Part shown: in pieces, positions 42,605-64,000 of the stretch | Position numbering within the stretch: position 1 is the stretch's first letter | How the letters are laid out: every line of letters starts with the position of its first letter | Source of the DNA: Oculina patagonica | Lineage: Eukaryota | DNA: 64,000 nt | Reading direction: 5' to 3' | Assembly (NCBI RefSeq): GCF_052425735.1 | Contig: NC_135766.1 | Location: forward strand, 27,342,001 to 27,406,000 | Position numbers and translations under genes: made by a program | Notes under the pieces: generated by a model | The model's input: only the letters and a program-made list of their open reading frames with translations | Told to the model about the DNA's origin: nothing | Database searches by the model: none

Positions 42605-45600
42605 TTATGATTGTTGTGGCTGAGTAGCCTGATGTTCTGTAGGCATGGAGCGAATTATGTCCGAGTCACCAGGATCAGTGATACTGAGGACTGACACACG
42701 GAAGTACTTGCCGCAAGCTGTTCCAAGTTCAATGTTGTTGCCGGTGTAATGATGGACTCCAGTCTTGGCCAACATGGCATAGTACTCAATCTCACTTTTC
42801 CTGTAAACAAAAACATGGAAAATTATAGCAATGTCATGCTATCCTTTATAGCTCATTGGTAATGTACATTTGTGACCTAGCCATTACATCATTACTTCTT
42901 TATTTATTTAATTGAAAAAAAAAAAGCAAGCAAGAACTTCAATTCAGCATTTCCTTAAGCCCAATCCTGTCAGGCAAGATGCTCCAAAGGATGTTAATCC
43001 AAAAACCTGCCAGAAATCAACAACATTTTTCCTCTTTAAGAGCAGCATGTACACAATGTGTACACCTAAAAAGTTTTTAGACAACCTTACACAAAACAGC
43101 TGTTTGTGCGTGCAAAACGTTAGAGGTTTACATTAAGGTTTAGCAATGAGTCACTTGAATTCCAAAAGACAAGAGATAAAGATTGCGGGTGATTCACTGA
43201 AGAAAAGTTTTGAATTTTAAAGGTACTTAATGAACCCATGTTTAAAAGGGCAGCAAAATGAATGCAAATGGCAATTTCTAACCAGTTACAGGGCAGTAAA
43301 TAAGGTATTGTCGCCAGTCTTGTAAGCAGATTGACTTGTTATTACCTGAGCTGGGGAGTGTTATTTGAGATTATAACAAGCTTTGCCTTGCCCTGTCGAA
43401 GTGTCTTGAGAGTGGACTTGTATCCTAACGTGAACTTTCCACTCTTCATCACAAGAGCAAGACGAGAGTTAATACTCTCCATTGCCTTTTTCTACAAAAG
43501 AAAACATACAAGATTAAATTACCAGTTTGCTGACAACTGATTAGAGTTTTCTACAGCAAAAACTAGTACACTGTTACAGATGATTTCAGTTTACTTTGGC
43601 CGCCCGCTTTGCGAAGTTCGTGGGAAATTAGAACCTTTGTTACAAGTTGCCAATTATGTTGCGAAGTTTGCGAATCAAATTGCGAACTTCGATATAAAGT
43701 TCCCAACTTTGGCCCGACTGAACTTTCCAAGTTTGGTAGTTGAGAAGAAACAAGACATGTTGCTTGAAAGTCATGGCGATATCCAAACTCGATGATTTTT
43801 GAACTGGTCAAGGAAAGTTGAAGTAGCTTGAAGTGTAAGACAACGTTTTGCATCAGCGATCACGCAAGTGATTTGCGGATAAATAAATTTTATGCATGCA
43901 GAAATTTGGTGAAATTTTAACTTTTTTTGTATAAAAATACACATTTAACGATTTCTGTGAGGCATCGTCATCAATTTCAAGTCTTCTGCGTTTGTAAGCC
44001 GAATAAACCTAGATGGTTTACCCATATGTAAAATTGATTTTAATAGAAGCCGACGCGATGCGACAGAGAAGACTAGACAATATGTTTACGGCTCGCTGAA
44101 CATAAAAGTTTTCGAACCTTCTTTACTTTTATTTTTATGACATTTGTTTCTAACAGTTTAGCGTAGCAAAGCCCTTTTTGATAACATAATTACAGAAGGT
44201 TTTAATAAATTCGGGCTGAAGTTGGGAACTTTGTATCGAAGTTCGCAGTTTGATTCGCAAATGTCACAATGTAATTGGCAACTTCGTAACAAAGTTTCCA
44301 ATTTCCCAACAAACTTCGCAAAGTGGGCGGCCAAAGTAAACTGAAATCAACTGTAAGACCATAATTCCTGGAACAACAGGATTAACTACAATTGCAAAAG
44401 TTGTTATTCTGAGTACAAACAAATAGCACACCTTTGCGGCACGTGACTTTTGTAGTACACGATGGTTGTGCCAAGCAAAAATTTTGCGCAAAACTCTCAT
44501 TATTGAACATTTCTTAGGTTGTGATTGACACAGAGTTTTCTTAAGTCTGGTTCTCATATGATTGCCCTGATCGTTTCTATCATATTGATCATTTGCAAAT
44601 ACTGAGGCGATCGTAGGTGATCAAAGCNNNNNNNNNNNNNNNNNNNNNNNNNNNNNNNNNNNNNNNNNNNNNNNNNNNNNNNNNNNNNNNNNNNNNNNNN
44701 NNNNNNNNNNNNNNNNNNNNNNNNNNNNNNNNNNNNNNNNNNNNNNNNNNNNNNNNACGATCGCCTGGTATGAGCGAAGACCTACCAAAAACAATCATTT
44801 TAGCCCTAGATCCAAAACAATGACAGCCTTCAATGAAAGAGCAAAACTTGTGGCCTCATATATTTTCTGTTATTACAGTTGTATGGCAAGGAAGGGTTAG
44901 AGAAGCTAGAAGGATAGAACGAGGGTGATCCAAGTGATCCAATCGCCACAGACGTCACTGTGCGCTTGTGTAATGTTGTCATATAATCTCCCCGATTGCA
45001 AGAAAGACAAAGACAAAGGTGATAGAAACGATCAGGGTGATTATATGAGAACCAGCCTTTGAGAATGTGCTAACAATTTTCTCGTACAAGACATTATATT
45101 AAACACTACTGTCACATATTGATGTGTCAAATTGCAAGGAAACAGGAAAGGAATATGAGGAATGGAATAAATATATAATTTGTCACATTTAACGTTTGAC
45201 AAACTTTTAAACATGTGAGTAGTAAGCATATTTCAAAGCTAAATACAGTCAACTCTCTCATAATGGACACCTCTATAAGACGGACACCTTCATAAGACGG
45301 ACACCTGGTGATGGTCCCTGCTGTTTTTCAGTCATTTTACTGTAACCAAACTCCCTATAAGACGGACACCTCTCTTAGACGGACAACGGACACTTTGAAA
45401 TAATCAACGGACACTTAAGAAGTGTTTTTTTTTATCATGTTATATCGCTAAAGCAAAGTTAGTCAGTGCCCAAAGAATACGTGTATACCAAGCTAACTAA
45501 CCAAAAACAACAAAGCTTCCCTGCTTACGTGAAGCAGTGAATTATCGATTGTAAAGAAAAACGAGTCAATTTTCTGATACTATTGATGTCCCAGTTTGTA

Positions 45601-46329: not shown

Positions 46330-49300
46330 ATGACTCAGTCAATTGTAGTTCAAGGTAATCTACTAGTATTTTTAGCAGAATGTCGATTGATTATGTTACT
46401 CGATAATCATGTATTCATTTTTCTTCCCTCCTTTTGAAAAATTAACCTGATGTTCCAGTTGGACAATGTGGAAATCAAGTAAGATGTGGTTTGTTGTTGC
46501 TTGATTTGTACACCTTTATAATTGAAATTTGAACAAAAATTGTGTTGAAGTCAAGCTAGTCCCTGGAAACAAATTTCTTAAAACAAAATGTGAAATAAGA
46601 ACATTTCTCCTCGTAATTTAAAAGGGAATGGGGAAGAAATGATGTGGAATATCTGTCATTTATATTTTCTGTGGGCCATTCCATTGTATATCCCTACCCC
46701 CTATTGATGAGGTAAGTCAAAATTGACCCCTTAGGCCTAAGAAAAAAAGATCAGAGTGCCGACATGATACCCAACCTCGTCCCCAGGGCTATCCGCATTT
46801 TGCCCCTGACGAATCTGTTTGTTGGGGGCACCACGCAGACAGTCCTGGGGACGAGGTTGACATGATACCCCCCAGAAGTAACCCAAAATCAAAATCAGAA
46901 TCCCTTCAGAAAAAAGCGAACTTTTGCTTAACCCTTTCAGAAAATTATATTTGAATGGTCAAAAAAAGCCTTCAGGGTTACCCCCTCAGCAATGACTTTT
47001 AAAGCCTTTTCAGAAAATCTCATCTATAGGGAGGGAGGGGGGGGGGGGTGGATATAAAATGGCAATAGTCATTCAGTGCGCAGTGACCTGGGGAGTGAGG
47101 GGAGGTGACCGAGCACCTCCCTGGCAACTAGAACTTAGAACAACATGAAACACAACAAAAACAGTGAGGCGACAAAACAAGGTCACCTCAGCCCACCCCA
47201 GGCCAGGCCGAGCAGACAACTGTAAAATGGCCTATTATGGCCCTGCAGAACATCTGGACTCAGAACAGTGGTGGATTTAGGAAATAGGGATCAAAAAAAT
47301 TTTGGCCTCTCCCTCTCCCCACTTCCTTGTGAGTCAGAAGGAAGCCACCAACACCTCCCCATCAGGAGGGGATTAACGTCTTGTCTTATTGATTAAAGGT
47401 TGAAGTCTTGTTTCCTTGGAGAAGGGGTGGGGATCACTGGTTCTCTTTGTGTACTCTTCTTCCATGTCTTCTTAACTTTTATGTCGATGTTTTAAAAACA
47501 GATTGGATGCCGGTTCTGGGATTTGGCTTTGAGAGAGCATGCCAGCACAAATAAGGTAACAGCTACTAAGTCCTGTTATGTTATGTGATCTGCAATAATA
47601 CTGGATTAAGTCCTTAAGTGTACATTGTAATCATTTAGTTTGTAGTTTAGTTGTAGGCTTTTAAGTGCTGCTTCCCTTGTAAGCTTGTTAAGACAGACAG
47701 ATTTTCCCCTCAAAAGGCAGAATTGAATTCCTTTCTTCCTTTTCAAATTATGCTACTAATTTTACAATAATATTCTTTTTAGAAATCTAAGCTTTGTTTC
47801 TACTTTGGTCTTTGTTAGGTATTTAAGTTAGAGCAAACATTGAGGTGATTTTCAATACCCACAGTACCAGATAAAAATAATATGTAGATTAGATCAAAAC
47901 TAATTCTAGTATAATAAAACCTACTATTAACCTGTATTTCTATTCTAGCATGGGATATTTGATGAATCTCTCAGTAGCTTCTTCCGTAATGTTGATACAA
48001 GGTATGCAATAAACAAACTAGGTTGTCCACTTCTTTTCAATACATTAAAGTTGCCTTTTCATGCAGATTGGTGTTTTTTACTTCATCAATATCCTTAGTG
48101 ATGATTTTCTTTATTCTACTAATGATTGTACAAATTTTAGTTTTGATAACTAGACATTATTTGAAATATCTTTTTGTTTGTTTTTTTCTCAGATACAAGA
48201 ATCCAGTTGATATTCCCTTAGGAAATGTGAAGCAAAGGATCAAATCCTTAAAAGCTAGGGTAAGCAGCCATTTTTATTGTTTCTGTTAGTGTACTAAAAT
48301 ACTACTTAGGTGTGAAATGGAAATGTCACATAATTTTAACTTATTAATAAAAATGTTTAGGGTAATAAAATGTAACACCTTTTTCTTTCAATACATCAGG
48401 CAGTCGTCATAGATATGGAGGAAGGTGTTGTTAATGAGATCCTTAAAGGGCCTTTACGAGATGTATTTGACTGCCAGCAGTTAATAACTGACGTGTCTGG
48501 ATCAGGCAATAACTGGTAAGCTGTCAATCGTCTTATAAACTGAACACAATTTACATTTTAAGCTACTAAAAAACTATCAAGGTTGTAAAATATTGACAAC
48601 TGCTATACTGCAGTACTACCAGAACTAAGACAATCTAGTATTCCCAAGGGGGGGTACTCCAGTTTGTAAATGACGGGGATGATCGAAGGATTTTTTTGGG
48701 GTTGTTTTTATAGGTTGGAAAATTTGGCAAGTATTTTTTGGGTGACTTGATTTAAATAGGAGATTTTTTTGGGTATTAAAAACGAACTTAAGTGCCTTGG
48801 CGTATTTATGGCATGATGAATAAGCAAACACGAGCGTTCAATTTTTTATGGTTTTCTTTGTGTTATATTATTGCCCCTCCTGGCAATTTAAGGGTAATTT
48901 GACAAGGGATTTATTTGGGGGTTATTTTTGGTCCAGGGATTTTTTTGGGTAATGTTGGAAGACTTAGGGATTTTTTTGGTCCTGGGTTTTGCCTCCATTG
49001 AATCATCCCCGTCATTTACAATCCGGAGTACCCCCCCCCCCCCGTGCTAGTATTAGTAAGAGTGTACACAAGTACAGTAAAATCCTGATAACTCAAACCT
49101 TCAAGCAAAATTGGAAAAGGTTCAAGTTATCAGGGTTTGAGTCCTCAAGGATAAAATTACCGGTAGTAAGAAAATGACCTGAAGTGGAATTAAAAAAGGT
49201 TTGAGTCAGCAGGTTGTTCGAGTCATATTTGAGGGTTTGAGTTCTCAGGATTCAACTGTAGAACTCAAAACTACAAACTCCTTATAAGCGTCATCAGTGG

Positions 49301-52300
49301 TAGATCTATAGGAGGGACTCATTTTTGTTTAGAAATACTAGGCATGAAGCCTAGCTGAAAATCCCCTCCTTGAGCACATCTGGATCTGCTGCTTCTGGTG
49401 TCCTCATGGAGTTAAACTATTTTACACAGGGCAACAGGGTTCATGATGTATGGACAGCAGTATAGAGAACAGATCAGTGAAGTCATCAGACATGCTGCTG
49501 AACTCTGTGACTGCCTGCAGTGTTTCTTTCTAATCCACTCAATGGGCGGAGGTGAGTTTTAACATGTGTGGGAGGCTTGTTACATGTACTGTAGCATACT
49601 CATTAACAAACCTGCTGAGACAATCAAGAATAAACTGTCCCACAAAAGGACATACACCACTACACAGAGGCAATAAACAGGGCCTGAACTACAAATCCAT
49701 ACTAACCACTGACGCAAAATAACATAAGAATGAGAGATATATGGCATATATGTTGCCTTTCTTTTAACACAAGATTATGATTTCACAGTGAAGTAGAGTG
49801 ACTGCATAATTTTATTTTAGAGCAGTTTTCAATTGAGTGACAAACAAATTAAAGTAATTTGCATTTGCTTCAAATGGTTTTGCATAACTACGCTAAGTGA
49901 TTGGCTTACAAATCTTGTAGTACTTTATCAACCAATCGGAAGTAAAACTAAAAACCAATTACAGTGACTTGCACAGGCACGTCTTCCCATGCTTGTGTTG
50001 GCTACAACTTGTATTTCTTTTGAGTTTTGATTGGTTCACTGTATTGTTTGTACCTTTTGTGATTGGCCAGTGAGTGATTACTTTGGTTTGGGTTTTACGA
50101 CACTCAACTGAAAACCGCCCTGACTCATACTCATTTCACAATGTGATTACTATTCTTATTTTCCAAGGTACTGGTTCTGGTTTGGGTACATCAGTGTTGA
50201 ACCTGCTTGCAGATGAATATCCTGATGTATATCGCTTCACTACAGCAGTCTACCCATCAGCTGACGATGATGTCATTACATCACCTTATAACAGGTAACT
50301 TGGCTACATCAGGGTCGTACCCTTTTTCACAAACAATTTTCCAGGACTTTTAGAGGACTCAGATTGATTTTATCAGGACTCCAAAATTCACATTAACCCT
50401 TTCACTCCCAAGATCGCAATATTATTTCTCTTTCCTGTCTGTCATACATTTCTTATAAATTATGTTAGTTCTGAGAATTCAGTTGTCACTTGAGTTTTGT
50501 TTTAACTTGACGAATTTTTAATGAGTTTGAGAAGTCATAGTCTTGACTAACCATTTCGTCTCAGCTTACTGCTCTGAGTGTTTACTTAAACCTGCTCCAG
50601 TTGTTTGAAGGAGGTTTAACGTGAATTTATGGTTACAAGTTGTCAAAAGTATAACAGGATAGAAAATCAATGTTCTGCATCAAAGTCACTGAATATTCAC
50701 CGAGTGAGTAATAATTTACTGACTAGTTATATATGGTACTTTCAGTGTCCTTGCTATGCATCAGCTGACAGAACATGCAGACTGTGTTCTACCAATAGAA
50801 AACCAGGTATGTTTTCAACAAATCATAAAAATGTCCTCACTTATAATACACAAAGTAAGCCATAAAACTTCTTCTTTCTGCTTGTAAGATGAAATGAGAT
50901 TTTTGGCTGTTCGGGTAGAAATTATTTATTTTGTAGACTACAATCTTGGACAAAACTAGTTGAAACAACTGCATTTAATGGATTTTTCACCAATGTCCCG
51001 ACCTGCAAGCGGGTTAAAATATTTTATCCCCCTCTCCCCCTACTCAATATGTTGTTTCTTGAGATTTGTGGTTCGACAGGCTTTGTTTTGAAAACACTTA
51101 GCATTAACAACATTGAAATGGGGGAGGGGTATTGCAAAACTGAACTCTGTTAGCTAATTTAGTGGAAATTTGCTACGTGTTTCAACAGTTTTGTTCAAGA
51201 TTGTAGCTCATTTGTCACCGTGTAAGTAAATCGATCATGGATAGCGCAGTGGTGAGAGCACTTGCCTCCCACCAATGTGGCCCGGTTTTGATTTCTGGAT
51301 CCGGCATCATATGTGGGTTGAGTTTGTTGTTGGTTCTCGCCTTGGTCCAAGGGTTGTTCTCTGGGTTCTCTGGTTTTCCTCCCTCATGAAAAACCAACAT
51401 TTTCAAAATTCTAGTTCAACCTGGATAGAGGACCCGCATGAAAACCAGCTAGAGCTGATGTGGCTTCCTCTCTAAATATATAATATTTAAATTTTTTAAT
51501 TAGGCTTTAGTGGACATCTGTAACAAAGTTTCAAGTGCCTTACCACCATCTAAGTCTGGTAAAAAGGTGTTCTCGTCAAGCAGCCAATCACATGTAAACG
51601 CCAGCAGTGCTGTTACATCAGGAGAGGGTGGTGTCGACAAAGGTCCAGAAAAGCCATTTGACAACATGAACAACATTGCAGCTAACCTTATTTTAAACAT
51701 GACAAGCTCGGCAAGATTTGAAGGTTCCTTAAATGTGGATTTAAATGAAATCACAATGAATTTGGTGCCGTTTCCCAAGATCCATTATCTCGTGTCCAGC
51801 CTGACGCCACTCTACAGTCTAACTGATGTTAATCTTCCTCCTCGAAGGCTGGATCAAATGTTCTCAGACGCTTTCTCAAAAGACCACCAACTCATAAAAG
51901 CTGATCCAAAACACAGCTTGTATCTGGCGTGTGCTTTGATGTTAAGAGGAAATGTTGAAATTTCTGACATAAGAAGGAACATTGAAAGACTAAAACCTTC
52001 ACTTCATTTTATACATTGGAATCAAGAAGGTTGGAAGACTGGATTGTGTTCTGTACCCCCGGTGGGTCATCCATATTCACTTTTAGCCCTTGCAAATAAC
52101 ACTTGTATTAGACACACATTTCAGGATCTCAAGGACCGCTTTATGAAGCTTTACAAGCGCAAGGCTCATGTCCACCATTACACTCATGTGGATGGTATGG
52201 AAGCGTCTCAGTTTGATATCAGTATTGAGTCACTAAACTCTCTGATTAGCGAGTACAACACACTTGAGGCACACATGGGTAGGGTTGTGGATGACATTCA

Positions 52301-52319
52301 AAGGTTAACAATTGCATGA
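46330..52319 (+). CDS. TUBE1: Epsilon-tubulin (486 aa); exons 46330-46354, 46459-46478, 47502-47555, 47949-48001, 48193-48259, 48400-48515, 49430-49551, 50168-50294, 50746-50806, 51504-52319
   Basis: MTQSIVVQVGQCGNQIGCRFWDLALREH, LKARAVVIDMEEGVV, GSGNNWA, HSMGGGTGSGLG, SARFEGSLNVDLNEITMNLVPFP. Exon sum 1461 nt, in frame. Confidence 0.96.
51238..51485 (+). mobile_element. tRNA-derived SINE (second family) in TUBE1 intron 9
   Basis: Head TAGCGCAGTGGTGAGAGCACTTGCCTCCCACCAATGTGGCCCGG with a degenerate B box. Confidence 0.7.
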
Positions 52320-56904: not shown

Positions 56905-59900
56905 ATGCCGCCTTCAAATCAAGACTATCGTGACACGATTGAAGCCTTGAAAGCTATCATCGATGAATCGTTGAAACACCCTGAAAAGAGGAAAGAATTT
57001 GTGGACGAAGGATCTATAGAGCTTATAATTGGTGAGTGGTTACGTATAAACAAGATTTAAAGCTTGTTATGGGTTGATATTTGGAGTGTTTTGATAAAAG
57101 CAGCTGTTATGATTAAGATACATGTGAAGTGTTTGTCTGAAGTGTTTATGTGTAGTCCATTGTTCGCTATAAACACGTGCTGAGCAAATGAATTCTATTT
57201 AAACGTAGTGCATTTTTAGAGTTAACTTTTGCGTCATTATTGATTGAAGAATCTCTGAGCATGTAAAGAAAGCGCTACCTTTTGCAAAATTCTGCATGAG
57301 CTTTCTGAAACTTTGACCACCACCACCCCCCTACCTCCCCCTGGGGTGCCCCTTATGAAAGGGACGGGGATGCTCCTTGTCTCACTTGGGGGTGTAAGTT
57401 ACAGATTTTGGTCTCGTTAAGGGTGCTCCAGCAGAACACCCTTATTTGAAAAACTATTACATGTACGTGTCACCCTCAATAAATAAAGTTTGATTGATTG
57501 ATTGATTGATTCATTGATTGAATGAACACCAATATTTTGAGCCTCGTTTAGGGCTGCATGTGAAGAAATATCAAAGGCTGTCATACTGTGTTGCCAGGAA
57601 AGACCAATATTATTATTGTGTAGGCTTGATAATATCTTTCAGCGGCCCAAATAGCTTTGAGCTATGCCCAGATTTGTTCCCCTTTAGGGGTGTAATTCTA
57701 ATTTCCCAACAAGCATTCCACCCCTTCTCATATGGGAGTCCCCTAGCTTTGACTATCAATTTACAGCTGTTTTTGTCCTTCTTGGGAATCTTCAGCACTG
57801 TATAAGCATTGTTGATAATGGGAGGGAGTTTTTTTTTCCTCACACCTCAGGGATCCAACACGGGTAGTACACATGGTGGATAAAATGAGGATGTTATGGA
57901 GAAAGGAGGAGAGGTGTGATATCTGTTTGTCTTCAAAAAAATGTTTGAGGACACTGACAGTGTTCTAGGGGAGAAGATTTTTTTATTATTTTTTTGATGG
58001 TCTCAGGTTTGTGTGATGTAAAGAGCATTCCATGGAGCCTTGGTGCATACTGTGCAGCTGCTCTCAGAATTCTTGCTCATGGCAATGCCAAAGTCAAGGC
58101 CAAGATAGTTGGACGTGGAGGAATTTCCCCTCTACTGAAGCTCTGCGATCCTGAGGCAGTATCAGATGATGCAGGTCACTGCTTATATTTAATGAATATA
58201 TAATTTAAATAATCTACCGGTAATCGGATTGCTCCGCTGCCGGTCCAATAATTTCTAAGCTTTGGACTAGGTATTGTCCAGCATAATCCTGCACAAATTT
58301 GTTCCATTCAGTAAAAAAATTAACTTGACTCGCATGAACGATCCTTTCATACTTTTTATTTGTTTATAAAATTACAATGTTAGGGAATTTTTTTCCAGCT
58401 GAAACTCCCAGTGGGTCCTAGCAAGGTCAGAATTCCTTGTCTCATATCCCCCTTCTGCTTTCCACTTAAGTGATAAAAATCTTTTTCAGCTGTGAAATAA
58501 AAATTTTATTGACCAAGCTTGTCCAGGACCATACTGGAAGAATGTCTGCCCTCTTCTTTTCTGTACGGACCTCCCTGCACTCAGACCGTACTGTCAATTC
58601 TCCTACTAGGGCCCTCGCTCTTGGTTATTAAGATCTATAAAGCTGTGCTCTAGCAGAGCCTGGATACCACAGGTGGTCAACTTACTTTTGTCTTTGAGCA
58701 ACTTGTATAACTTCGCTATCATAAAAAATTGTTAAGAGCTCCAGGCACCCAAGCTTACTTATATGTGCAGAAGGGCCTTTGGGCACCCTGCAATTATTCT
58801 AGGAGCACAGCTTTGGATCTACAGTAGAACCCCGGTAACTCGAACTCTGAAGGGAAACGAAAAACAGTTCGAGTTATCGGGGTTTCGAGTTATCAGGGTC
58901 GATTGAATATTTAATTTACCAAGTTAATAGTTGATAGTTTAATGATTTTCAGCACTTTAGTATACAGTACAGTGCATATTGAACTTATCTTGTCAGAAAC
59001 TCTAACACGACCATACATTCTTATGATAAGAGTGGAAAATGGCTGTCAAAATACTTGATCAGTTCGTTGCTTTAATCAACAGACAACCATGGTGAGTTGC
59101 AAGAACCGAAATTTGAGTTATCAGGGTAAATTTGACCCACATTTTGTTCAAGGGAAACAAAATTTAGTTCGAGTTAGCAGGGTTTTCGAGTTAACCGAGT
59201 TCGAGTTAACCGAGTAAAAATGACTGAAAAATGGAGTCAAATCCAAGGGAAATGGAAGTTAGTTCGAGATAGCGGGGTTGTTCGAGTTATCCAAGTTCGA
59301 GTTACCGGGGTTCTACTGTATGTATTTTGCATTGTCTGATTAGTATTTAATTCTGTCATCTTATAGCCACTTCAGAAGACGCATATTGGAGATTGCTTGC
59401 TCATGAACAAGCTGCAGCAGTTCTTCAGATCATCAGCTTTCAGAATCCATCATGTCAAGCAGAAATGGTCACAGCTGGCGCAATCAAACACCTTGTCAGA
59501 TTGTGTGACGTGCTCAATCCTGAGGGTTGTCATACCAACTGCTGCCAGTCAACAAGTGAGCACTCGAGTGATGCAAGCAAGCTTCTTCAGGACTTGACCT
59601 ATAAGAAAAAACTGGTTGGAAAAGTAAAAGAAATGACTCTGGAAGATATCAGAGAAAATGCAGTCAAGTTGGTTAGAACTGGTGAGAAGCAAATTGCAAT
59701 AAGTCGTAATTTTTTCAGTCTCTTTTCCATGTACTGAAAAGCTATTCCATATATGACGAGCACTGCATAATATTGCTTTCATTAGACAAGTTAGCAATCA
59801 GGTCTTAGGCCAACAGGTCAAACTACAAATTACAGTGTTATTTTGTTGTAGGTCAAATTGGTTTTTGGATTTAAATTGTTTCTAAATATCTGTGTTATCT

Positions 59901-60862
59901 TATTTTGTTATCTTACTTTTTTAACATTGTCAAGCGCCCTTGAACGTATGGAAAGGGCGCTATACAAATGATTATTATTATTATTATTATTAATATGTTT
60001 CAACATGAAGACAACACTCAAAAACAACAGCAACACCCTTTAATGTACTCTTGCACTCACACGAAAAGATTAATACAAGGAGGAAGTGAAATAAAGTAAG
60101 GGTACTGGCTGCCTGGAATAACCATAGGGGCTAGTGGAGCCAGGCAACCAGTTAACAGCACTCTAACAATGACACATAACAATTTGAATTCATTAAAAGG
60201 AAATCTGGAGCAATTGTAAAAGTGTTATCTTCAGGTTGAAAAAGATTTAATCTAAAAACCACTATGACCTACAACATTGATATGTTCTTAAATTATGGGA
60301 GGAGTATTGGGGCAGGGGAGGGGGGGAAGCAACAGGAAGTGGGATTCCTAAGGTGGTGGGAAGCCAACCTTGTTCCCAGGGTCTCTCTCTCCCCACCCCC
60401 AAGAGGGGAGAGAGAGACCCTGGGAATGAGGTTGGTGGGAAGCTCGAGAAAAAGCAAAAATTTATCTCCATAAATTAAATTATTAACTTATTTGGTTATT
60501 AAGACTGGGAGTCAGTGGTGATAGGTGCAGGAAGCCAGATAGAGGAGTACAGAAATAATTCTTGACTAATTATTGTAATTTCTATCTGCAGGTCTTGTGA
60601 GTGGTTTGACTCAAGTGCACAGACTGTACAGTGTTGATTTATATGACACAACAGTTGAGTATCAGGATGTTAGAATCAGCGACGAGTTGATTAAGAGCCA
60701 GTTGATGTGGCCAGATATTGCTGTCAACCAAACAGACAGCTCATCAGAGGATAAAGAAAAATATGTCAATCCCAAGGTATGCAATATAATAGTTTTATTT
60801 GTGATTCCCTCAATATTAACCTATGTACAGCAACCCTCCAAGTTAAAACCAAAGTTCTAGTT

Positions 60863-60893
<31 letters not shown>

Positions 60894-63523
60894 TGAAATT
60901 GTAGAACCACTTGCCAGCCTGCCGACTACAAAAAGACTACTTCAGAGCTTGATCAGACTATTAACTGAACTGAAAATATTCTGAATGGTATGGATTCACT
61001 TTAAAAATTAGTTCTTCTGCTAATTAAACTGATTGGTTACTGAAACAAAATGTAAATGCAAAGAACCAAACTTGCAAGAAAATCACATTATATTTACTTA
61101 TAATTTCATATTGTGAAAACTAAAATTTTCCATTGGCAACTTCACCTTAATAGTTTGTTGCCAAATGGTCACTAAGGAAAAAAGTTAACTTGGAGGGTTG
61201 AACAGTTACTGTTAGTAATTTTTTGTTTATAAGCAATTATTTTACTTTTTCAGGATAGAGATTTTAGGTGGGTCGATGTTTATGTGACAGAAGTGATTGA
61301 TGCCTGTCACTTCTGGGCTCATGTCGGAGGGAAGCTGGTGATTGAAAGAATGGAAGCAATAAATAAAGAACTTTTATCACAGGTAAACAATGAAGCACTT
61401 GTAAAGATATAAGATAAATTCTGCTAAAAGTTTGAACAACAAGTGCAAAAATTAATTTCTAAAAAAACCAATAGGACAGTAACATTTAAAATAATATTTG
61501 AAACATCTCCCTTTAATTTGTTTCTCTAAGTAAGCCCACAATTAAATTATCAAGCATAATTTCTTGGAAAAGTTACTGTCAAACCTCAAAAAAATGTTGG
61601 ATAAAATGCAATGCCATGTTATTTTATTTTAAACTGACAGGAAGTCTGTTTTAATTAAAATAGAGATAACTTCAAATTCGATTTTACATGTATCTCATGG
61701 GTCTGATAAGTTCTTTTATTATACATTGTAGTCACTAGCTGTCTTCTCATTGGCTAAGAGCCTACAGCTAATTCTGGGAATCCGCATAACCCCGCACAAC
61801 CTACAGATTAGTGAATAATCTGCTAGCAGATTATTCACTAATCTGTAGGTTGCGCGCGCAATGCATGATTTCCAAGGGCAATGTGTCAGGCATCTGGCGG
61901 CGAAGGAAATTCATAGTTCGTCAATTCACTTCTTCAACCGAGAAATAGTTTGACCAAAGTTCAAAAATTGCTGGACAATAAAGTCTCAGAAAACACAAAA
62001 TGACTAACAAGAATTGGGAAGGAGCTATTCCACGATTTAGTAGGACGACCAGCCGGAATTAGCACAAGTTTTGAAACAGGTTGAAATCGTTTGTCATTTC
62101 TTCCTTTTTCAGAAAAACAATGTATAATAAAACAATTATTAGATTCGGTTTATGTGATATTCGGAATAATCAAGGTCTCAGTAAGTGTTTTCAGCCTCAG
62201 CCTTCGGCTTCGGCTGATAACACTTACTTCGACCTTGATTATTCTGGTTATCACAAAAACCTCATCCAATAATTGTTTACAGTCTGTATTCAAAGTACAT
62301 GTACAGGTGTCACCACGCTGCTAGTAACTTTATTTTTACCTTAATTGCGTGAATGGTCAGTGGAAACTATCATAACAACTGATTGTCAACTTAACTACAT
62401 GTATCAGTGATCAAAGCCCTCAAAGGCTTAAATACTCACTTTTCTAGAATGCAGTGAAAATAATTATATTTTTTATCACATCATTTAAATTCCATCAATT
62501 TAGTGAGATCTTGTCTTTCTTTAATTTGTATTTTTAGGAACAGATTCCTCTGAATTCCATACCAGAACCTGGGACATTTGTTTGTGTATCAGAAATGATT
62601 GGGGGTCACAAAGACTCCTACAGAGCTCAAGTTCTTTCAGCAGATCCTGGCAGTGATGGAAGTCTAACAGTAAAGGTCTTTGCTATAGACAATGGTTTTA
62701 CAAAAAGTGTCTCTGCTACTTGCTTGTATGTTTTACCAGAGCATCTCCTGGGCATTCCAACACAGGTACTAATGTTATAACTTGTTGTTGTTAGTACAAA
62801 CTTAATTTATTAAATAATAAAATAAATGTGAAGGCTTTGTAGCCTAATGTTCCGGGGTGGGGCGGGGTACTGCCCCAAAATATCTTAGCAGTTATGTGCT
62901 GGTTAATGGGGTCATGATTTTGAGCTTTCGATCTAGATCTAGATTTTGGAGACGATTCCAAGAATGGGGCGTGATATTTCAAATAGACAATATCTCAAAT
63001 TATCAACAGCCAAAACAGGATGTAAAAAAATTGCCCTGTTTTTACGATTGGGTATCATTTTGAATGCAATTTTCTAAAACAGGGTGCTACTTTGGAAAAT
63101 AATTTAATTTAGTACCCCCCTGCCCTCCCCCACCTGGGCCTAATGTTAACTGCTTTCCATCTGGCTGGTTTAAGAGGTCAGGTCTGGGTGAGGTCAACGT
63201 GTCATGTTTTTTAAACTCTTGTAATAAACTTAATAAAAGGTCCTTATAAAACAATACATAAATGACAGTTTCTTGCCTTTTCTTTTACTTCAACTTGTGA
63301 AATCCTATGCTACCACTATTGGGAGAGCTTTCCCTTGTAGTCCACTGTGTGACTATATGGAATACACAATCCCCTTTTCTAAGGAGGCTATTAAAAGAAA
63401 TATTGATAGATGTTTAAAGTTATAGATTAAAATATGTGATTATTCCTTTATAGGCTACCTTGTGCTGCTTATCTGGAGTTCAAGCACCACCCAAAAGTGC
63501 TGAAATTCTAGAACATGCTGCTG
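56905..63523 (+). CDS. Armadillo-repeat protein with embedded extended Tudor domain, 3'-partial; exons 56905-57031, 58007-58174, 59367-59681, 60592-60776, 61254-61382, 62538-62765, 63454-63523
   Basis: ARM motifs FVDEGSIELIIGL, AAALRILAHGNAKVKAKIVGRGGISPLLKL, AAAVLQIISFQNPSCQAEMVTAGAIKHLVRL. Tudor motifs VYVTEVIDACHFWA, YRAQVL, VKVFAIDNG, LPEHLLGIPTQATLCCLSGV. All junctions are in phase. Confidence 0.8.
58822..59318. mobile_element. Tc1/mariner-type MITE (CAGTAGAACCCCGGTAACTCGAAC TIR, TA TSD); degenerate relative at 49071-49260
   Basis: TIRs and internal TTCGAGTTA repeats. Confidence 0.85.
60831..61200. mobile_element. MITE with CAACCCTCCAAGTTAA TIRs
   Basis: Perfect 16-bp inverted termini. 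Confidence 0.7.
61797..61852. repeat. Perfect 56-bp spacerless palindrome
   Basis: CAACCTACAGATTAGTGAATAATCTGCT|AGCAGATTATTCACTAATCTGTAGGTTG. Confidence 0.95.
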
Positions 63524-64000
63524 GTAATTAGTGCATAATTTACCTCTGTGACCTGTGTGTGTGTGTTTTTCAGTAAATAAAGCCGAAGTACATTTATACT
63601 GTAGCTGCTTATAACCAGTTCTCTACCTGTGGTGCTTCTTGCTAATAAAAGTTCTTCAAGATTAATATTAGCAATCTATAGGCCATATAACCCCCCCCCC
63701 CCCAAGTTTAATTTAGTTTACTTTTGCCTATTTGCTCTTTTTTTCATTTATAGTAAATAATAACCATTATTTGGCTATTGCCTTTAATTAATTGCAAAGT
63801 CGTCATTGTAAGTTGAACAGTAATTCCATAACATGTTTAGCAGTGATATTTACATGTATGGAAGTGAAAAAAGGGCAAATATTGTATCATCATTACACTG
63901 AATTCAATATCCACTATGTGTTTAAGGTGCACTTAGAAATCTGACTGAAGAGAGTAATTCTTACCGAGTCTATGTTGCTGCTCAGCAAGGTCTGGATTTT

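What the first reader, a model, noticed from the sequence alone, without database searches (positions are those of the whole stretch)
59560..63523. Apparently circularly permuted extended-Tudor domain inserted inside an armadillo-repeat protein
Seen: after three ARM-like repeats the spliced protein reads SSDASKLLQDLTYKKKLVGKV...YSVDLYDTT...VRISDELIKSQL. It then reads VDVYVTEVIDACHFWA, a helix, a Tudor core and LPEHLLGIPTQATLCCLSGVQAPP, and finally KSAEILEHAA(G), which looks like a return to an ARM helix 3. Established: in extended Tudor (Tudor-SN type, TDRD family) domains the order is V.VT.V...FW, core, LP.QA..C.L.G..P, and only then S.EA...L...K.L...V ... V.L.D....I...L. Here the normally C-terminal SN-like half comes first. 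Inference: a segment spanning the C-half of repeat n and the N-half of repeat n+1 of a multi-Tudor gene was captured as a circular permutant. Its new termini would be adjacent in 3D, allowing insertion into an ARM loop. I do not recognise an ARM + permuted eTudor architecture; it could be an undescribed germline/piRNA or ciliary scaffold.
Basis: partly seen in the sequence, partly recalled or inferred. Interest (0 to 1): 0.88.

Follow-up and report, generated by a model that had tools for sequence, protein, structure and literature searches.

The report
Circularly permuted Tudor module inside armadillo protein
A coral gene, conserved across anthozoans, encodes an armadillo-repeat protein with a complete extended-Tudor module looped out of one repeat; its two halves sit in swapped order, a natural circular permutation apparently not described before, and the same protein carries a Schlafen-type domain and a lipid-anchor motif.

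Summary
The window is from Oculina patagonica. The exons at 59367-64000 belong to LOC144664652 (920 aa), and the CDS I assembled from the window reproduces the RefSeq protein. Spliced RNA contigs from three runs join the ARM, pre-Tudor and Tudor exons.

- **Architecture:** ARM repeats, a roughly 250-aa insert, more ARM repeats, a Schlafen AlbA_2 domain, a coiled coil and a C-terminal CaaX (CVIS).
- **Second half of the insert:** it matches canonical eTudor strands beta1-beta2, linker helix, Tudor core and beta3 (VIA Z 14.6, rmsd 2.8 A, 122 aligned). It stops there, and ARM helix 3 follows.
- **First half of the insert:** it is predicted as helix-strand-helix-strand-helix. In a two-chain ESMFold2 test it packs on the second half (ipSAE 0.74, best control 0.02). 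Contacts are beta1-beta4 and beta3-beta5, the OB-fold order.
- **Profile test:** moving the first half behind beta3 raises the summed HMM score on 50 canonical eTudor domains from 802 to 915 bits (100 shuffles: mean 788, max 829).
- **Conservation:** the arrangement is found in stony corals, sea anemones and an octocoral.
- **Limits:** the aromatic cage is degenerate. Origin and function are untested, and all structural evidence is predicted.

The scan also noted a different "permuted Tudor-like domain" elsewhere in this genome; I did not examine it.

The parts
56905..57031 (+). Coding exon 1 with the start codon (residues 1-43), first ARM repeat
   Evidence: tblastn of P0024; a GT..AG-consistent join reproduces P0024
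58007..58174 (+). Coding exon 2, ARM repeat
   Evidence: RNA contigs cover 58006-58174 and continue into the next exon
59367..59681 (+). Coding exon 3. It carries ARM helix 3, helix 1 and helix 2 (to about 59518). The insert then starts with the conserved H-x2-CC motif, SN-like helix alpha1 (S165-T176, from about 59564), strand beta4 (K179-K186) and an extra helix.
   Evidence: splice junction 59680/60591 in three runs
60592..60776 (+). Coding exon 4. It carries SN-like strand beta5 (Y216-D222), helix alpha2 (I232-L241) and a low-confidence acidic linker.
   Evidence: junction 60774/61252
61254..61382 (+). Coding exon 5. It carries SN-like strands beta1 (W271-V279) and beta2 (F285-V289) and the eTudor linker helix.
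   Evidence: HMM and structural alignment to SND1, Papi and TDRD1 eTudor N-terminal parts; junction 61380/62536
62538..62765 (+). Coding exon 6, the Tudor core beta-barrel, with a degenerate aromatic cage (M328, Y336, A357, N360, F362)
   Evidence: Pfam TUDOR; alignment to SND1 3omc; VIA Z 14
63454..63523 (+). Coding exon 7. It carries SN-like strand beta3 (T386-S391) and the end of the insert (about 63495), then ARM helix 3 (EILEHAAG).
63927..64000 (+). Coding exon 8 (runs to 64011, just past the window), where the ARM repeat continues. Twelve further coding segments follow downstream, to about 14.6 kb beyond the window. They encode ARM repeats, the SLFN AlbA_2 domain, a coiled coil and the CaaX box.
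   Evidence: Pfam Arm 418-456, ARM_ARMC5-like 384-538 and SLFN_AlbA_2 683-817

Best explanation
Window 56905 onward encodes an expressed protein conserved across Anthozoa (P0024, 920 aa). Its ARM-repeat solenoid is interrupted, between helix 2 and helix 3 of about the fourth repeat, by a 250-residue extended-Tudor (eTudor) module. In a canonical eTudor the order is OB beta1, beta2, linker helix, Tudor barrel, OB beta3, alpha1, beta4, beta5, alpha2. Here the order is alpha1, beta4, (extra helix), beta5, alpha2, a disordered linker of about 27 aa, beta1, beta2, linker helix, Tudor barrel, beta3. This is a circular permutation cut at the beta3/alpha1 loop. That loop is short, so the new N and C termini lie side by side. 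The whole module can then hang out of one ARM loop while the solenoid stays continuous. These steps are shown computationally. The following steps are inferred. The module serves as a peptide or protein docking site displayed on the ARM scaffold, probably not through methyl-arginine, because at most 2 of the 4 cage aromatics and not the Asn are kept. It most likely arose by the duplication-and-truncation route from a tandem eTudor array. The whole protein is probably a membrane-tethered (CaaX) scaffold that brings an eTudor ligand close to its own Schlafen AlbA_2 nucleic-acid-binding or nuclease-type domain.
For: Gene model: the exon joins reproduce P0024. Spliced RNA contigs from three runs link the ARM, pre-Tudor and Tudor exons. 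Relatives have 2.9-3.8 kb contigs encoding 872-933 aa full-length proteins, so these are cDNA-like. Canonical half: the insert profile hits SND1, TDRKH and TDRD1 eTudors at E about 1e-7, ending at the L.G..P motif. VIA aligns 5ygb at Z 14.6, rmsd 2.8 A, 122 residues over model 124-249, and the solved chains' C-halves stay unmatched. ARM resumes: Pfam Arm 418-456 at E 1.9e-12. In the AF2 model with flanks, 175 residues spanning model 1-441 superpose on a contiguous 176-residue stretch of a designed ARM protein (4rv1_A: Z 24.6, rmsd 1.6 A). The solenoid therefore closes over the insert. Permuted half: both AF2 models give the secondary-structure order H-E-H-E-H before beta1. ESMFold2 with two chains (263-398 against 158-262) gives ipSAE 0.74 against a best control of 0.02. 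That mark was reached by 51 of 78 solved complexes and 2 of 108 mismatched pairs; the runs share at least 79% of contacts and the partner pLDDT is at least 68. The closest contacts are V272-V276 (beta1) with L181-G183 (beta4), and L387-S391 (beta3) with Y216-L220 (beta5). Beta1/beta2 also sit on L172-T176 (alpha1), and L390 on I232-L236 (alpha2). This is the 1-2-3-5-4-1 OB-fold order. Profile test: a profile with the segment moved behind beta3 scores 914.7 summed bits on 50 eTudor domains of four multi-Tudor proteins, against 802.4 without the segment and 742.4 in native order. One hundred column shuffles give mean 788.5, sd 19.0, max 828.8. Twenty-three alignments extend into the appended part, against a shuffle mean of 4.3 and max of 12. 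Four of six weak hits of the segment-only profile fall directly after Tudor cores. Conservation: the same order occurs in Scleractinia, Actiniaria and the octocoral Dendronephthya. The canonical insertion point of Tudor between OB beta2 and beta3 is taken from bioRxiv 10.1101/140376.
Against: All structural evidence is predicted, and the models know canonical eTudors, so a pass may reflect likeness recalled from training. The AF2 model with ARM flanks gives pLDDT 30-45 for the pre-Tudor segment and draws beta1/beta2 as part of a long helix. The insert-only model is moderate (mean pLDDT 70, pTM 0.61, four other models 51-64), and the alignment has only 9-10 sequences. The pre-Tudor profile alone finds nothing significant among PDB sequences or in Pfam. 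hhalign against 45 canonical C-halves gives only P = 0.056. The score gain in the profile test comes mostly from alpha1-beta4. Sequential structure aligners cannot show the permutation, and none aligned the first half. No coordinates were available for a permutation-aware superposition.
Confidence: 0.8

Rival explanations
1. The eTudor is truncated rather than permuted. Only beta1, beta2, the linker helix, the Tudor barrel and beta3 derive from an eTudor. The 110 residues before them are an unrelated, family-specific alpha/beta linker or an ARM-loop elaboration that does not rebuild the SN-like fold.
For: The segment alone has no significant match in PDB sequences or Pfam, and hhalign gives P = 0.056. 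AF2 with flanks is unconfident there.
Against: The two-chain prediction gives OB-fold-specific strand pairings at ipSAE 0.74 against 0.02 for controls. The un-permuted profile gains about 126 bits over the shuffle mean, z about 6.6. The secondary-structure order matches an SN-like C-half. Bare beta1/beta2/beta3 strands without partners would expose a half barrel. The segment is as conserved as the Tudor core (invariant D219 L220 D222 T223 I232 E235 L236 W243 P244).
Confidence: 0.1
2. The pre-Tudor segment does complete an OB-like barrel but is analogous rather than homologous. It would have been recruited or evolved de novo after a half eTudor was inserted, so this is not a true circular permutation by descent.
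For: The sequence signal is weak and concentrated in alpha1-beta4. There is an extra helix between beta4 and beta5. No donor tandem array was identified.
Against: The profile gain is specific to the canonical position and order. Rotated, reversed and shuffled versions do not gain. The motif register (S.[DE]A...L..L...K.L.G.V, then Y.V.L.D, then the helix) follows canonical C-halves.
Confidence: 0.07
3. The architecture is a gene-model artefact: two neighbouring genes (an ARM gene and a Tudor gene) wrongly fused.
For: None found. This is the default worry for a predicted multi-exon model.
Against: Single spliced contigs in three runs cross ARM exon 2, exon 3 and the Tudor exons. ARM helices lie in the same exons as insert sequence at both borders, exon 3 and exon 7. 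cDNA-like contigs in several species and gene models in eight genera show the same order.
Confidence: 0.01

Closest known systems
Canonical extended Tudor domains (SND1/Tudor-SN TSN domain, TDRKH/Papi, TDRD1, Drosophila Tudor eTud9-11, Krimper, Qin, TOFU-6)
   Same: It has the Tudor barrel, the linker helix and the two N-terminal OB strands plus beta3 (VIA Z 12-14.6 over about 115-125 residues). The predicted OB-fold partner elements alpha1, beta4, beta5 and alpha2 pack in the same way.
   Different: The elements run in a different order along the chain: the SN-like C-half comes first. There is an extra helix between beta4 and beta5. The module is nested inside another domain instead of being free-standing or in tandem. 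The aromatic cage is degenerate (SND1 F740/Y746/Y763/Y766/N768 correspond to M/Y/A/N/F in Oculina; residue numbers from my knowledge of Liu et al. 2010, alignment).
Tudor-SN itself as a nested-domain precedent (Tudor inserted between beta2 and beta3 of the fifth SN domain)
   Same: Both are domain-in-domain constructions that rely on adjacent termini (bioRxiv 10.1101/140376).
   Different: Here there is one more level of nesting: the Tudor sits inside the OB fold and the OB fold sits inside an ARM repeat. The middle layer is circularly permuted.
C. elegans PETISCO-PUCH link (TOFU-6 eTudor binding the Schlafen-fold nuclease subunit TOFU-1; PUCH anchored by a C-terminal TM helix)
   Same: An eTudor, a Schlafen-type domain and a C-terminal membrane anchor work together. 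TOFU-6 binds through its SN-like surface, not the aromatic cage (PMC10567574). The TOFU-6 eTudor (9g6z) is among the structural matches (Z 11.7, rmsd 4.8-5.0 A, 109-110 aligned).
   Different: In the nematode these are separate proteins, while here they form one polypeptide with an ARM scaffold. The anchor here is a CaaX motif, not a TM helix. No orthology is shown, and nuclease residues were not testable.
ARMC5-type and other ARM-repeat scaffolds (beta-catenin, importin-alpha)
   Same: It has the ARM fold (Z 21-24.6, rmsd 1.6-2.4 A, about 175-185 aligned) and Pfam Arm hits.
   Different: PF24768 ARM_ARMC5 scores 47.4 bits, below its 79.9 cut-off, so this is not an ARMC5 family member. No BTB domain is present. 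A 250-aa folded module lies inside one repeat.

Membership tests
Extended Tudor (eTudor) domain | Tudor core beta-barrel recognised by PF00567 | tested here: met
   P0024 273-392, 43.7 bits against cut-off 23; also met in the octocoral and anemone orthologues
Extended Tudor (eTudor) domain | Two OB (SN-like) strands and a linker helix N-terminal of the core, and strand beta3 (LP.QA..C.L.G..P) after it | tested here: met
   HMM alignment to 3omc, 5vqg and 4b9x; VIA Z 14.6, rmsd 2.8 A, 122 aligned
Extended Tudor (eTudor) domain | SN-like C-half (alpha1, beta4, beta5, alpha2) completing the OB barrel | tested here: met
   Predicted only: ipSAE 0.74 against best control 0.02, with beta1-beta4 and beta3-beta5 contacts; profile gain z about 6.6
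Extended Tudor (eTudor) domain | Canonical order along the chain (C-half follows beta3) | tested here: not met
   ARM helix 3 follows beta3 directly; the C-half-like segment lies upstream at residues 160-245
Extended Tudor (eTudor) domain, methyl-arginine readers | Aromatic cage of four aromatic residues plus Asn | tested here: not met
   Cage positions read M328, Y336, A357, N360 and F362 in Oculina. Position 357 is Ala in all orthologues. Position 360 is Y or F only in anemones and the octocoral.
Armadillo repeat proteins | Tandem three-helix repeats forming a continuous superhelix | tested here: met
   Pfam Arm E 1.9e-12; model aligns to designed ARM and beta-catenin at Z 21-24.6 across the insert
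ARMC5 family (PF24768) | Score above the Pfam gathering threshold | tested here: not met
   47.4 bits against 79.9
Schlafen AlbA_2 domain (PF04326) | Match above the Pfam gathering threshold | tested here: met
   Residues 683-817, 40.3 bits against 25.3; 42.7 bits on the C-terminal part alone
Schlafen nucleases | Catalytic acidic residues of the Schlafen core | tested here: inconclusive
   No sequence match to any solved Schlafen chain. A conserved E-D-D-x-H-D-F-R and a D-G motif exist, but equivalence was not established.
CaaX-prenylated proteins | C-terminal Cys-aliphatic-aliphatic-X | tested here: met
   CVIS in Oculina; CVIS, CVIA, CAIS or CVIC in the full-length orthologues. Actual prenylation is not testable here.

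The most novel reading that the evidence does not exclude
The fusion acts as a Rosetta stone. An eTudor that docks partners through its SN-like surface, a Schlafen-type domain and a membrane anchor form one ancient functional unit, as in nematode PETISCO-PUCH. In anthozoans this unit is welded into one ARM-scaffolded, farnesylated protein acting in piRNA-precursor or other RNA processing or surveillance. The circular permutation would be what allowed the eTudor to be plugged into the scaffold. A weak structural hit to an unidentified 'Schlafen AlbA-2 domain-containing protein' of 792 aa in AlphaFold DB hints that the family may reach beyond Anthozoa.
Probability: 0.15. Interest if true: 0.8.

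Novelty: new variant of a known kind. Interest (0 to 1): 0.62.

Why it matters
eTudor domains are the main adaptor modules of the PIWI/piRNA pathway and of Tudor-SN. All described ones have the same chain order. A natural circular permutant shows that the Tudor-in-OB unit is a single folding unit that tolerates re-threading. It is a three-level nested-domain case (Tudor within OB within ARM), and it gives a ready-made design for inserting an eTudor into a loop of another protein. The covalent link of a cage-less eTudor to a Schlafen AlbA_2 domain and a membrane-anchor motif echoes the PETISCO-PUCH connection found in C. elegans. It therefore offers a testable lead on whether Tudor-Schlafen cooperation is older than nematodes. 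The gene is present in Nematostella, where it can be tested genetically.

Tried and rejected
1. A profile of the pre-Tudor segment alone against PDB sequences gave only chance-level hits with E of 0.15 or more. Against Pfam it gave nothing relevant. A weak SNase hit on exon 3 (E 0.088) was not reproduced.
2. hhalign of the segment against 45 canonical C-halves had the correct register but only P = 0.056.
3. The AF2 model with ARM flanks had low confidence in the segment. I used it only for ARM continuity.
4. Foldseek and VIA searches (pdb, pdb_via, pdb_via_wide, atlas) are sequential aligners and the Tudor half fills the lists. None covers the first half convincingly. Long alignments with high rmsd to tandem and single-Tudor proteins (4q5y 227 columns, rmsd 14; AFDB rows with rmsd 14-24) are too unspecific to count.
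5. The ESM Atlas feature search gave no usable hit.
6. The Schlafen region has no match among PDB sequences.
7. P0007, P0011, P0019 and P0020 from the representative search are bacterial repeat proteins, so I discarded them as false positives.
8. The two-gene artefact was rejected by RNA contigs.
9. A search for an insert-less ARM-Schlafen host protein, or for paralogues, found none.
10. Literature searches for a permuted eTudor or an ARM-Tudor-Schlafen protein, and for the gene identifiers, found nothing.

Full report
**What is there**

The window is G000:C9:27342001-27406000. Protein P0024 (XP_078381950.1, "uncharacterized protein LOC144664652 isoform X2", Oculina patagonica) lies on a contig of exactly the same length, 32,227,393 bases. 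I read the exons from the sequence. I fixed the first two by requiring GT..AG and identity to P0024. The exons are 56905-57031, 58007-58174, 59367-59681, 60592-60776, 61254-61382, 62538-62765, 63454-63523 and 63927-64011. Their joined translation equals the first 430+ residues of P0024. The gene runs about 14.6 kb beyond the window in twelve more coding segments.

**Expression and one-gene status**

Contigs from three runs (X1, X2, X3; three studies) skip exactly the predicted introns with GT..AG ends. The junctions are 59680/60591, 60774/61252 and 61380/62536. One 1487-nt contig covers 58006-58174, 59368-59680, 60591-60774, 61252-61380 and 62536-62763 without a break. A fourth run (X15) has contigs running into introns, so it looks like DNA. 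In relatives, contigs of 2.9-3.8 kb encode 872-933 aa full-length proteins, which can only be spliced transcripts. The "two separate genes" objection is therefore refuted.

**Architecture**

Pfam on P0024 gives these matches:
- Arm at 418-456 (E 1.9e-12).
- An ARMC5-like match at 384-538, below that family's cut-off.
- TUDOR at 273-392 (43.7 bits against a cut-off of 23), matching profile positions 8-121 of 121.
- SLFN_AlbA_2 at 683-817 (40.3 bits against 25.3).

The N-terminal 150 residues are ARM-like. The C-terminus has a coiled-coil stretch and ends in CVIS. This CaaX motif is kept as CVIS, CVIA, CAIS or CVIC in the full-length orthologues.

**The canonical half of the insert**

A profile of the insert (residues 150-400, nine species) hits SND1, TDRKH/Papi and TDRD1 eTudor chains at E about 1e-7. 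The alignments start at the strand W-x-D-V-x-V-T-x-V and end at L-C-C-L-S-G-V-Q-x-P. About 100 C-terminal residues of each solved chain, the SN-like C-half, remain unmatched. The AF2 model of the insert has mean pLDDT 70 and pTM 0.61. It aligns to Papi 5ygb at Z 14.6 (rmsd 2.8 A, 122 residues, model 124-249). It aligns to Tudor eTud9, TDRD2, TDRD1 and SND1 at Z 12-14, always over model residues about 122-245. According to the survey read (bioRxiv 10.1101/140376), the Tudor barrel of an eTudor is inserted between beta2 and beta3 of the OB fold. Residues 271-394 of P0024 are therefore beta1, beta2, linker helix, Tudor and beta3.

**What follows beta3**

Beta3 is followed directly by K-S-A-E-I-L-E-H-A-A-G-A-L-R-N-L-T, a textbook ARM helix 3. 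The Pfam Arm and ARM_ARMC5 matches begin there. The AF2 model of residues 60-500 has confident helices there, with pLDDT 77-91. In that model, 175 residues spread over model positions 1-441 superpose on a contiguous 176-residue stretch of a designed ARM protein (4rv1_A, Z 24.6, rmsd 1.6 A). They superpose similarly on beta-catenin and importin-alpha (Z about 21). The two ARM parts therefore form one uninterrupted solenoid, and the ends of the insert must be adjacent. Downstream exons supply ARM repeats, not a normal C-half.

**The pre-Tudor half**

Both AF2 models predict the same order of elements for residues 160-245:
- helix 166-176
- strand 181-188
- helix 190-202
- strand 215-222
- helix 232-238

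A disordered acidic linker follows. This is the alpha1-beta4-beta5-alpha2 order of an SN-like C-half, with one extra helix.

Sequence evidence from the segment alone is weak:
- No significant PDB or Pfam hit.
- hhalign against 45 canonical C-halves cut from four multi-Tudor proteins gives P = 0.056. It has the expected register and a 21-residue insertion.
- Four of six sub-threshold hits of the segment profile in those proteins fall immediately after a Tudor core.

Two stronger tests followed.

First, I split the module into two chains, 263-398 and 158-262, and ran the complex predictor (ESMFold2, no alignments).
- The score was ipSAE 0.74 in three runs, against a best control of 0.02.
- That mark was reached by 51 of 78 solved complexes and 2 of 108 mismatched pairs.
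- The runs share at least 79% of contacts, and the partner pLDDT is at least 68.
- V272-V276 (beta1) touches L181-G183 (beta4).
- L387-S391 (beta3) touches Y216-L220 (beta5).
- Beta1/beta2 touch L172-T176 (alpha1).
- L390 touches I232-L236 (alpha2).

Beta1-beta4 and beta3-beta5 are the pairings that close an OB barrel of order 1-2-3-5-4-1. The tool warns that a pass can come from memory of similar solved structures. Here likeness to the eTudor fold is exactly the question, so the pass counts as support for likeness, not as proof.

Second, I built profiles from a ten-species alignment and scored them on the 50 eTudor domains of P0012, P0013, P0014 and P0016.

| Profile | Summed positive bits |
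|---|---|
| beta1-to-beta3 part alone | 802.4 |
| pre-Tudor segment appended after beta3 (canonical order) | 914.7 |
| native order | 742.4 |
| appended segment reversed | 769.5 |
| appended segment rotated | 808.8 |
| 100 column shuffles | mean 788.5, sd 19.0, max 828.8 |

In the canonical-order profile, 23 alignments extend into the appended part. The shuffles give a mean of 4.3 and a maximum of 12. Most of the gain comes from alpha1-beta4.

**Reading**

Together these results support a circular permutation of the eTudor at the beta3/alpha1 loop, nested between helix 2 and helix 3 of an ARM repeat. My confidence is about 0.8. The main weaknesses are:
- Everything structural is predicted.
- The alignment is shallow.
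- The flanked AF2 model is unconfident in the first half and mis-draws beta1/beta2.
- I could not obtain coordinates for a permutation-aware superposition.

**Distribution**

The same order is present in several groups:
- Stony corals: Acropora, Pocillopora, Desmophyllum and transcriptome-derived sequences.
- Sea anemones: Nematostella A7S0C2/LOC5514712, Actinia and Actinostola.
- The octocoral Dendronephthya.

The shared order includes the conserved H-x2-C-C motif at the N-terminal border and Q-A-x-L-C-C-L-x-G-V-Q at the C-terminal border. It therefore predates the split of Hexacorallia and Octocorallia. No insert-less homologue turned up, and the Oculina genome has no second copy. An AlphaFold DB cluster representative named "Schlafen AlbA-2 domain-containing protein" (A0A2T7NL96, 792 aa) aligns co-linearly at 23% identity, residues 152-386 against model 42-250. 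Its organism is not shown. This is a lead for a wider distribution and was not tested.

**Function (inferred)**

By the alignment to SND1, the cage positions F740, Y746, Y763, Y766 and N768 (numbering from my knowledge of Liu et al. 2010) correspond to M328, Y336, A357, N360 and F362. Position 357 is Ala in all orthologues. Position 360 is aromatic only in anemones and the octocoral. Canonical symmetric-dimethyl-arginine reading is therefore unlikely.

Cage-independent eTudor binding is known. The C. elegans TOFU-6 eTudor binds a helix of TOFU-1 on its SN-like surface. TOFU-1 is a subunit of the Schlafen-fold piRNA-precursor nuclease PUCH, and PUCH is membrane-anchored by a C-terminal TM helix (PMC10567574). 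The anthozoan protein joins a cage-less eTudor, a Schlafen AlbA_2 domain and a C-terminal CaaX motif on one ARM scaffold. The parallel is suggestive but untested. I could not establish catalytic residues in the AlbA_2 domain. The origin by capture of a window spanning two repeats of a tandem eTudor gene is the standard route to circular permutants. It fits the disordered linker of about 27 residues between alpha2 and beta1, but no donor was identified.

**Novelty**

Full-text searches found nothing on a permuted eTudor, on an ARM-Tudor-Schlafen protein, or on the gene identifiers. Databases call the gene "uncharacterized" or "Schlafen AlbA-2 domain-containing protein". I class it as a new variant of a known kind.

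Noticed in passing
window 48376-52316 (+): A multi-exon tubulin-family gene lies upstream of the ARM-Tudor gene. It has Pfam Tubulin (E 2.2e-8) and Tubulin_C (E 2e-32) hits, and its last exon ends at 52316. I did not determine which tubulin class it is.
   Followed up: partly
window 58600-59400 (intron 2): A high-copy repeat carries GTTCGAGTTA-type short tandem motifs. Summed contig depth reaches thousands to about 20,000 in all four runs, against about 5-20 on the exons, and there are many internal variant joints. It looks like an abundant, possibly transcribed, mobile element.
   Followed up: no
window 60364-60435, 61793-61856, 62130-62278 (introns): Three near-perfect inverted repeats lie in introns: 31-nt arms at 94%, 32-nt arms at 97% with no spacer, and 73-nt arms at 84% complementarity. 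Their surroundings show raised depth in the runs. They look like MITE-type insertions.
   Followed up: partly
P0024 residues 916-920; downstream of the window (about window coordinate 78630): A C-terminal CaaX motif (CVIS) is conserved across corals and Nematostella (CVIC). This suggests prenylation and membrane anchoring of the whole scaffold.
   Followed up: partly
window about 59531-59545 (H154, C157, C158) and 63463-63468 (C388, C389): Conserved His and Cys residues sit at both borders of the insert, which should be adjacent in 3D. They could form a metal site or a disulfide staple at the base of the loop-out. This is speculation only.
   Followed up: no
P0024 residues 590-650 (downstream of the window): The conserved linker between the ARM part and the AlbA_2 domain has an Arg run (RRRRRR), then a Ser/acidic stretch with an invariant D-T-D-G-D-T-D-G-E motif. 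Its function is unknown; it could be an NLS plus a phospho-acidic or Ca-binding-like motif.
   Followed up: no
AlphaFold DB entry A0A2T7NL96: This 792-aa protein, named 'Schlafen AlbA-2 domain-containing protein', aligns co-linearly with the insert model (residues 152-386 against 42-250) at 23% identity. It is more divergent than the anemone orthologues, and its organism is not shown. It may be an orthologue outside Anthozoa.
   Followed up: no
same genome, another piece (scan note s1-310930): The scan holds another first-reader note of a 'Tudor-like domain that appears circularly permuted' elsewhere in this genome. A whole-genome search with the pre-Tudor segment found only the present locus, so that note is probably a different thing.
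   Followed up: partly
window 44628-44756: A run of 129 N (assembly gap or masked stretch) lies between the neighbouring genes.
   Followed up: no
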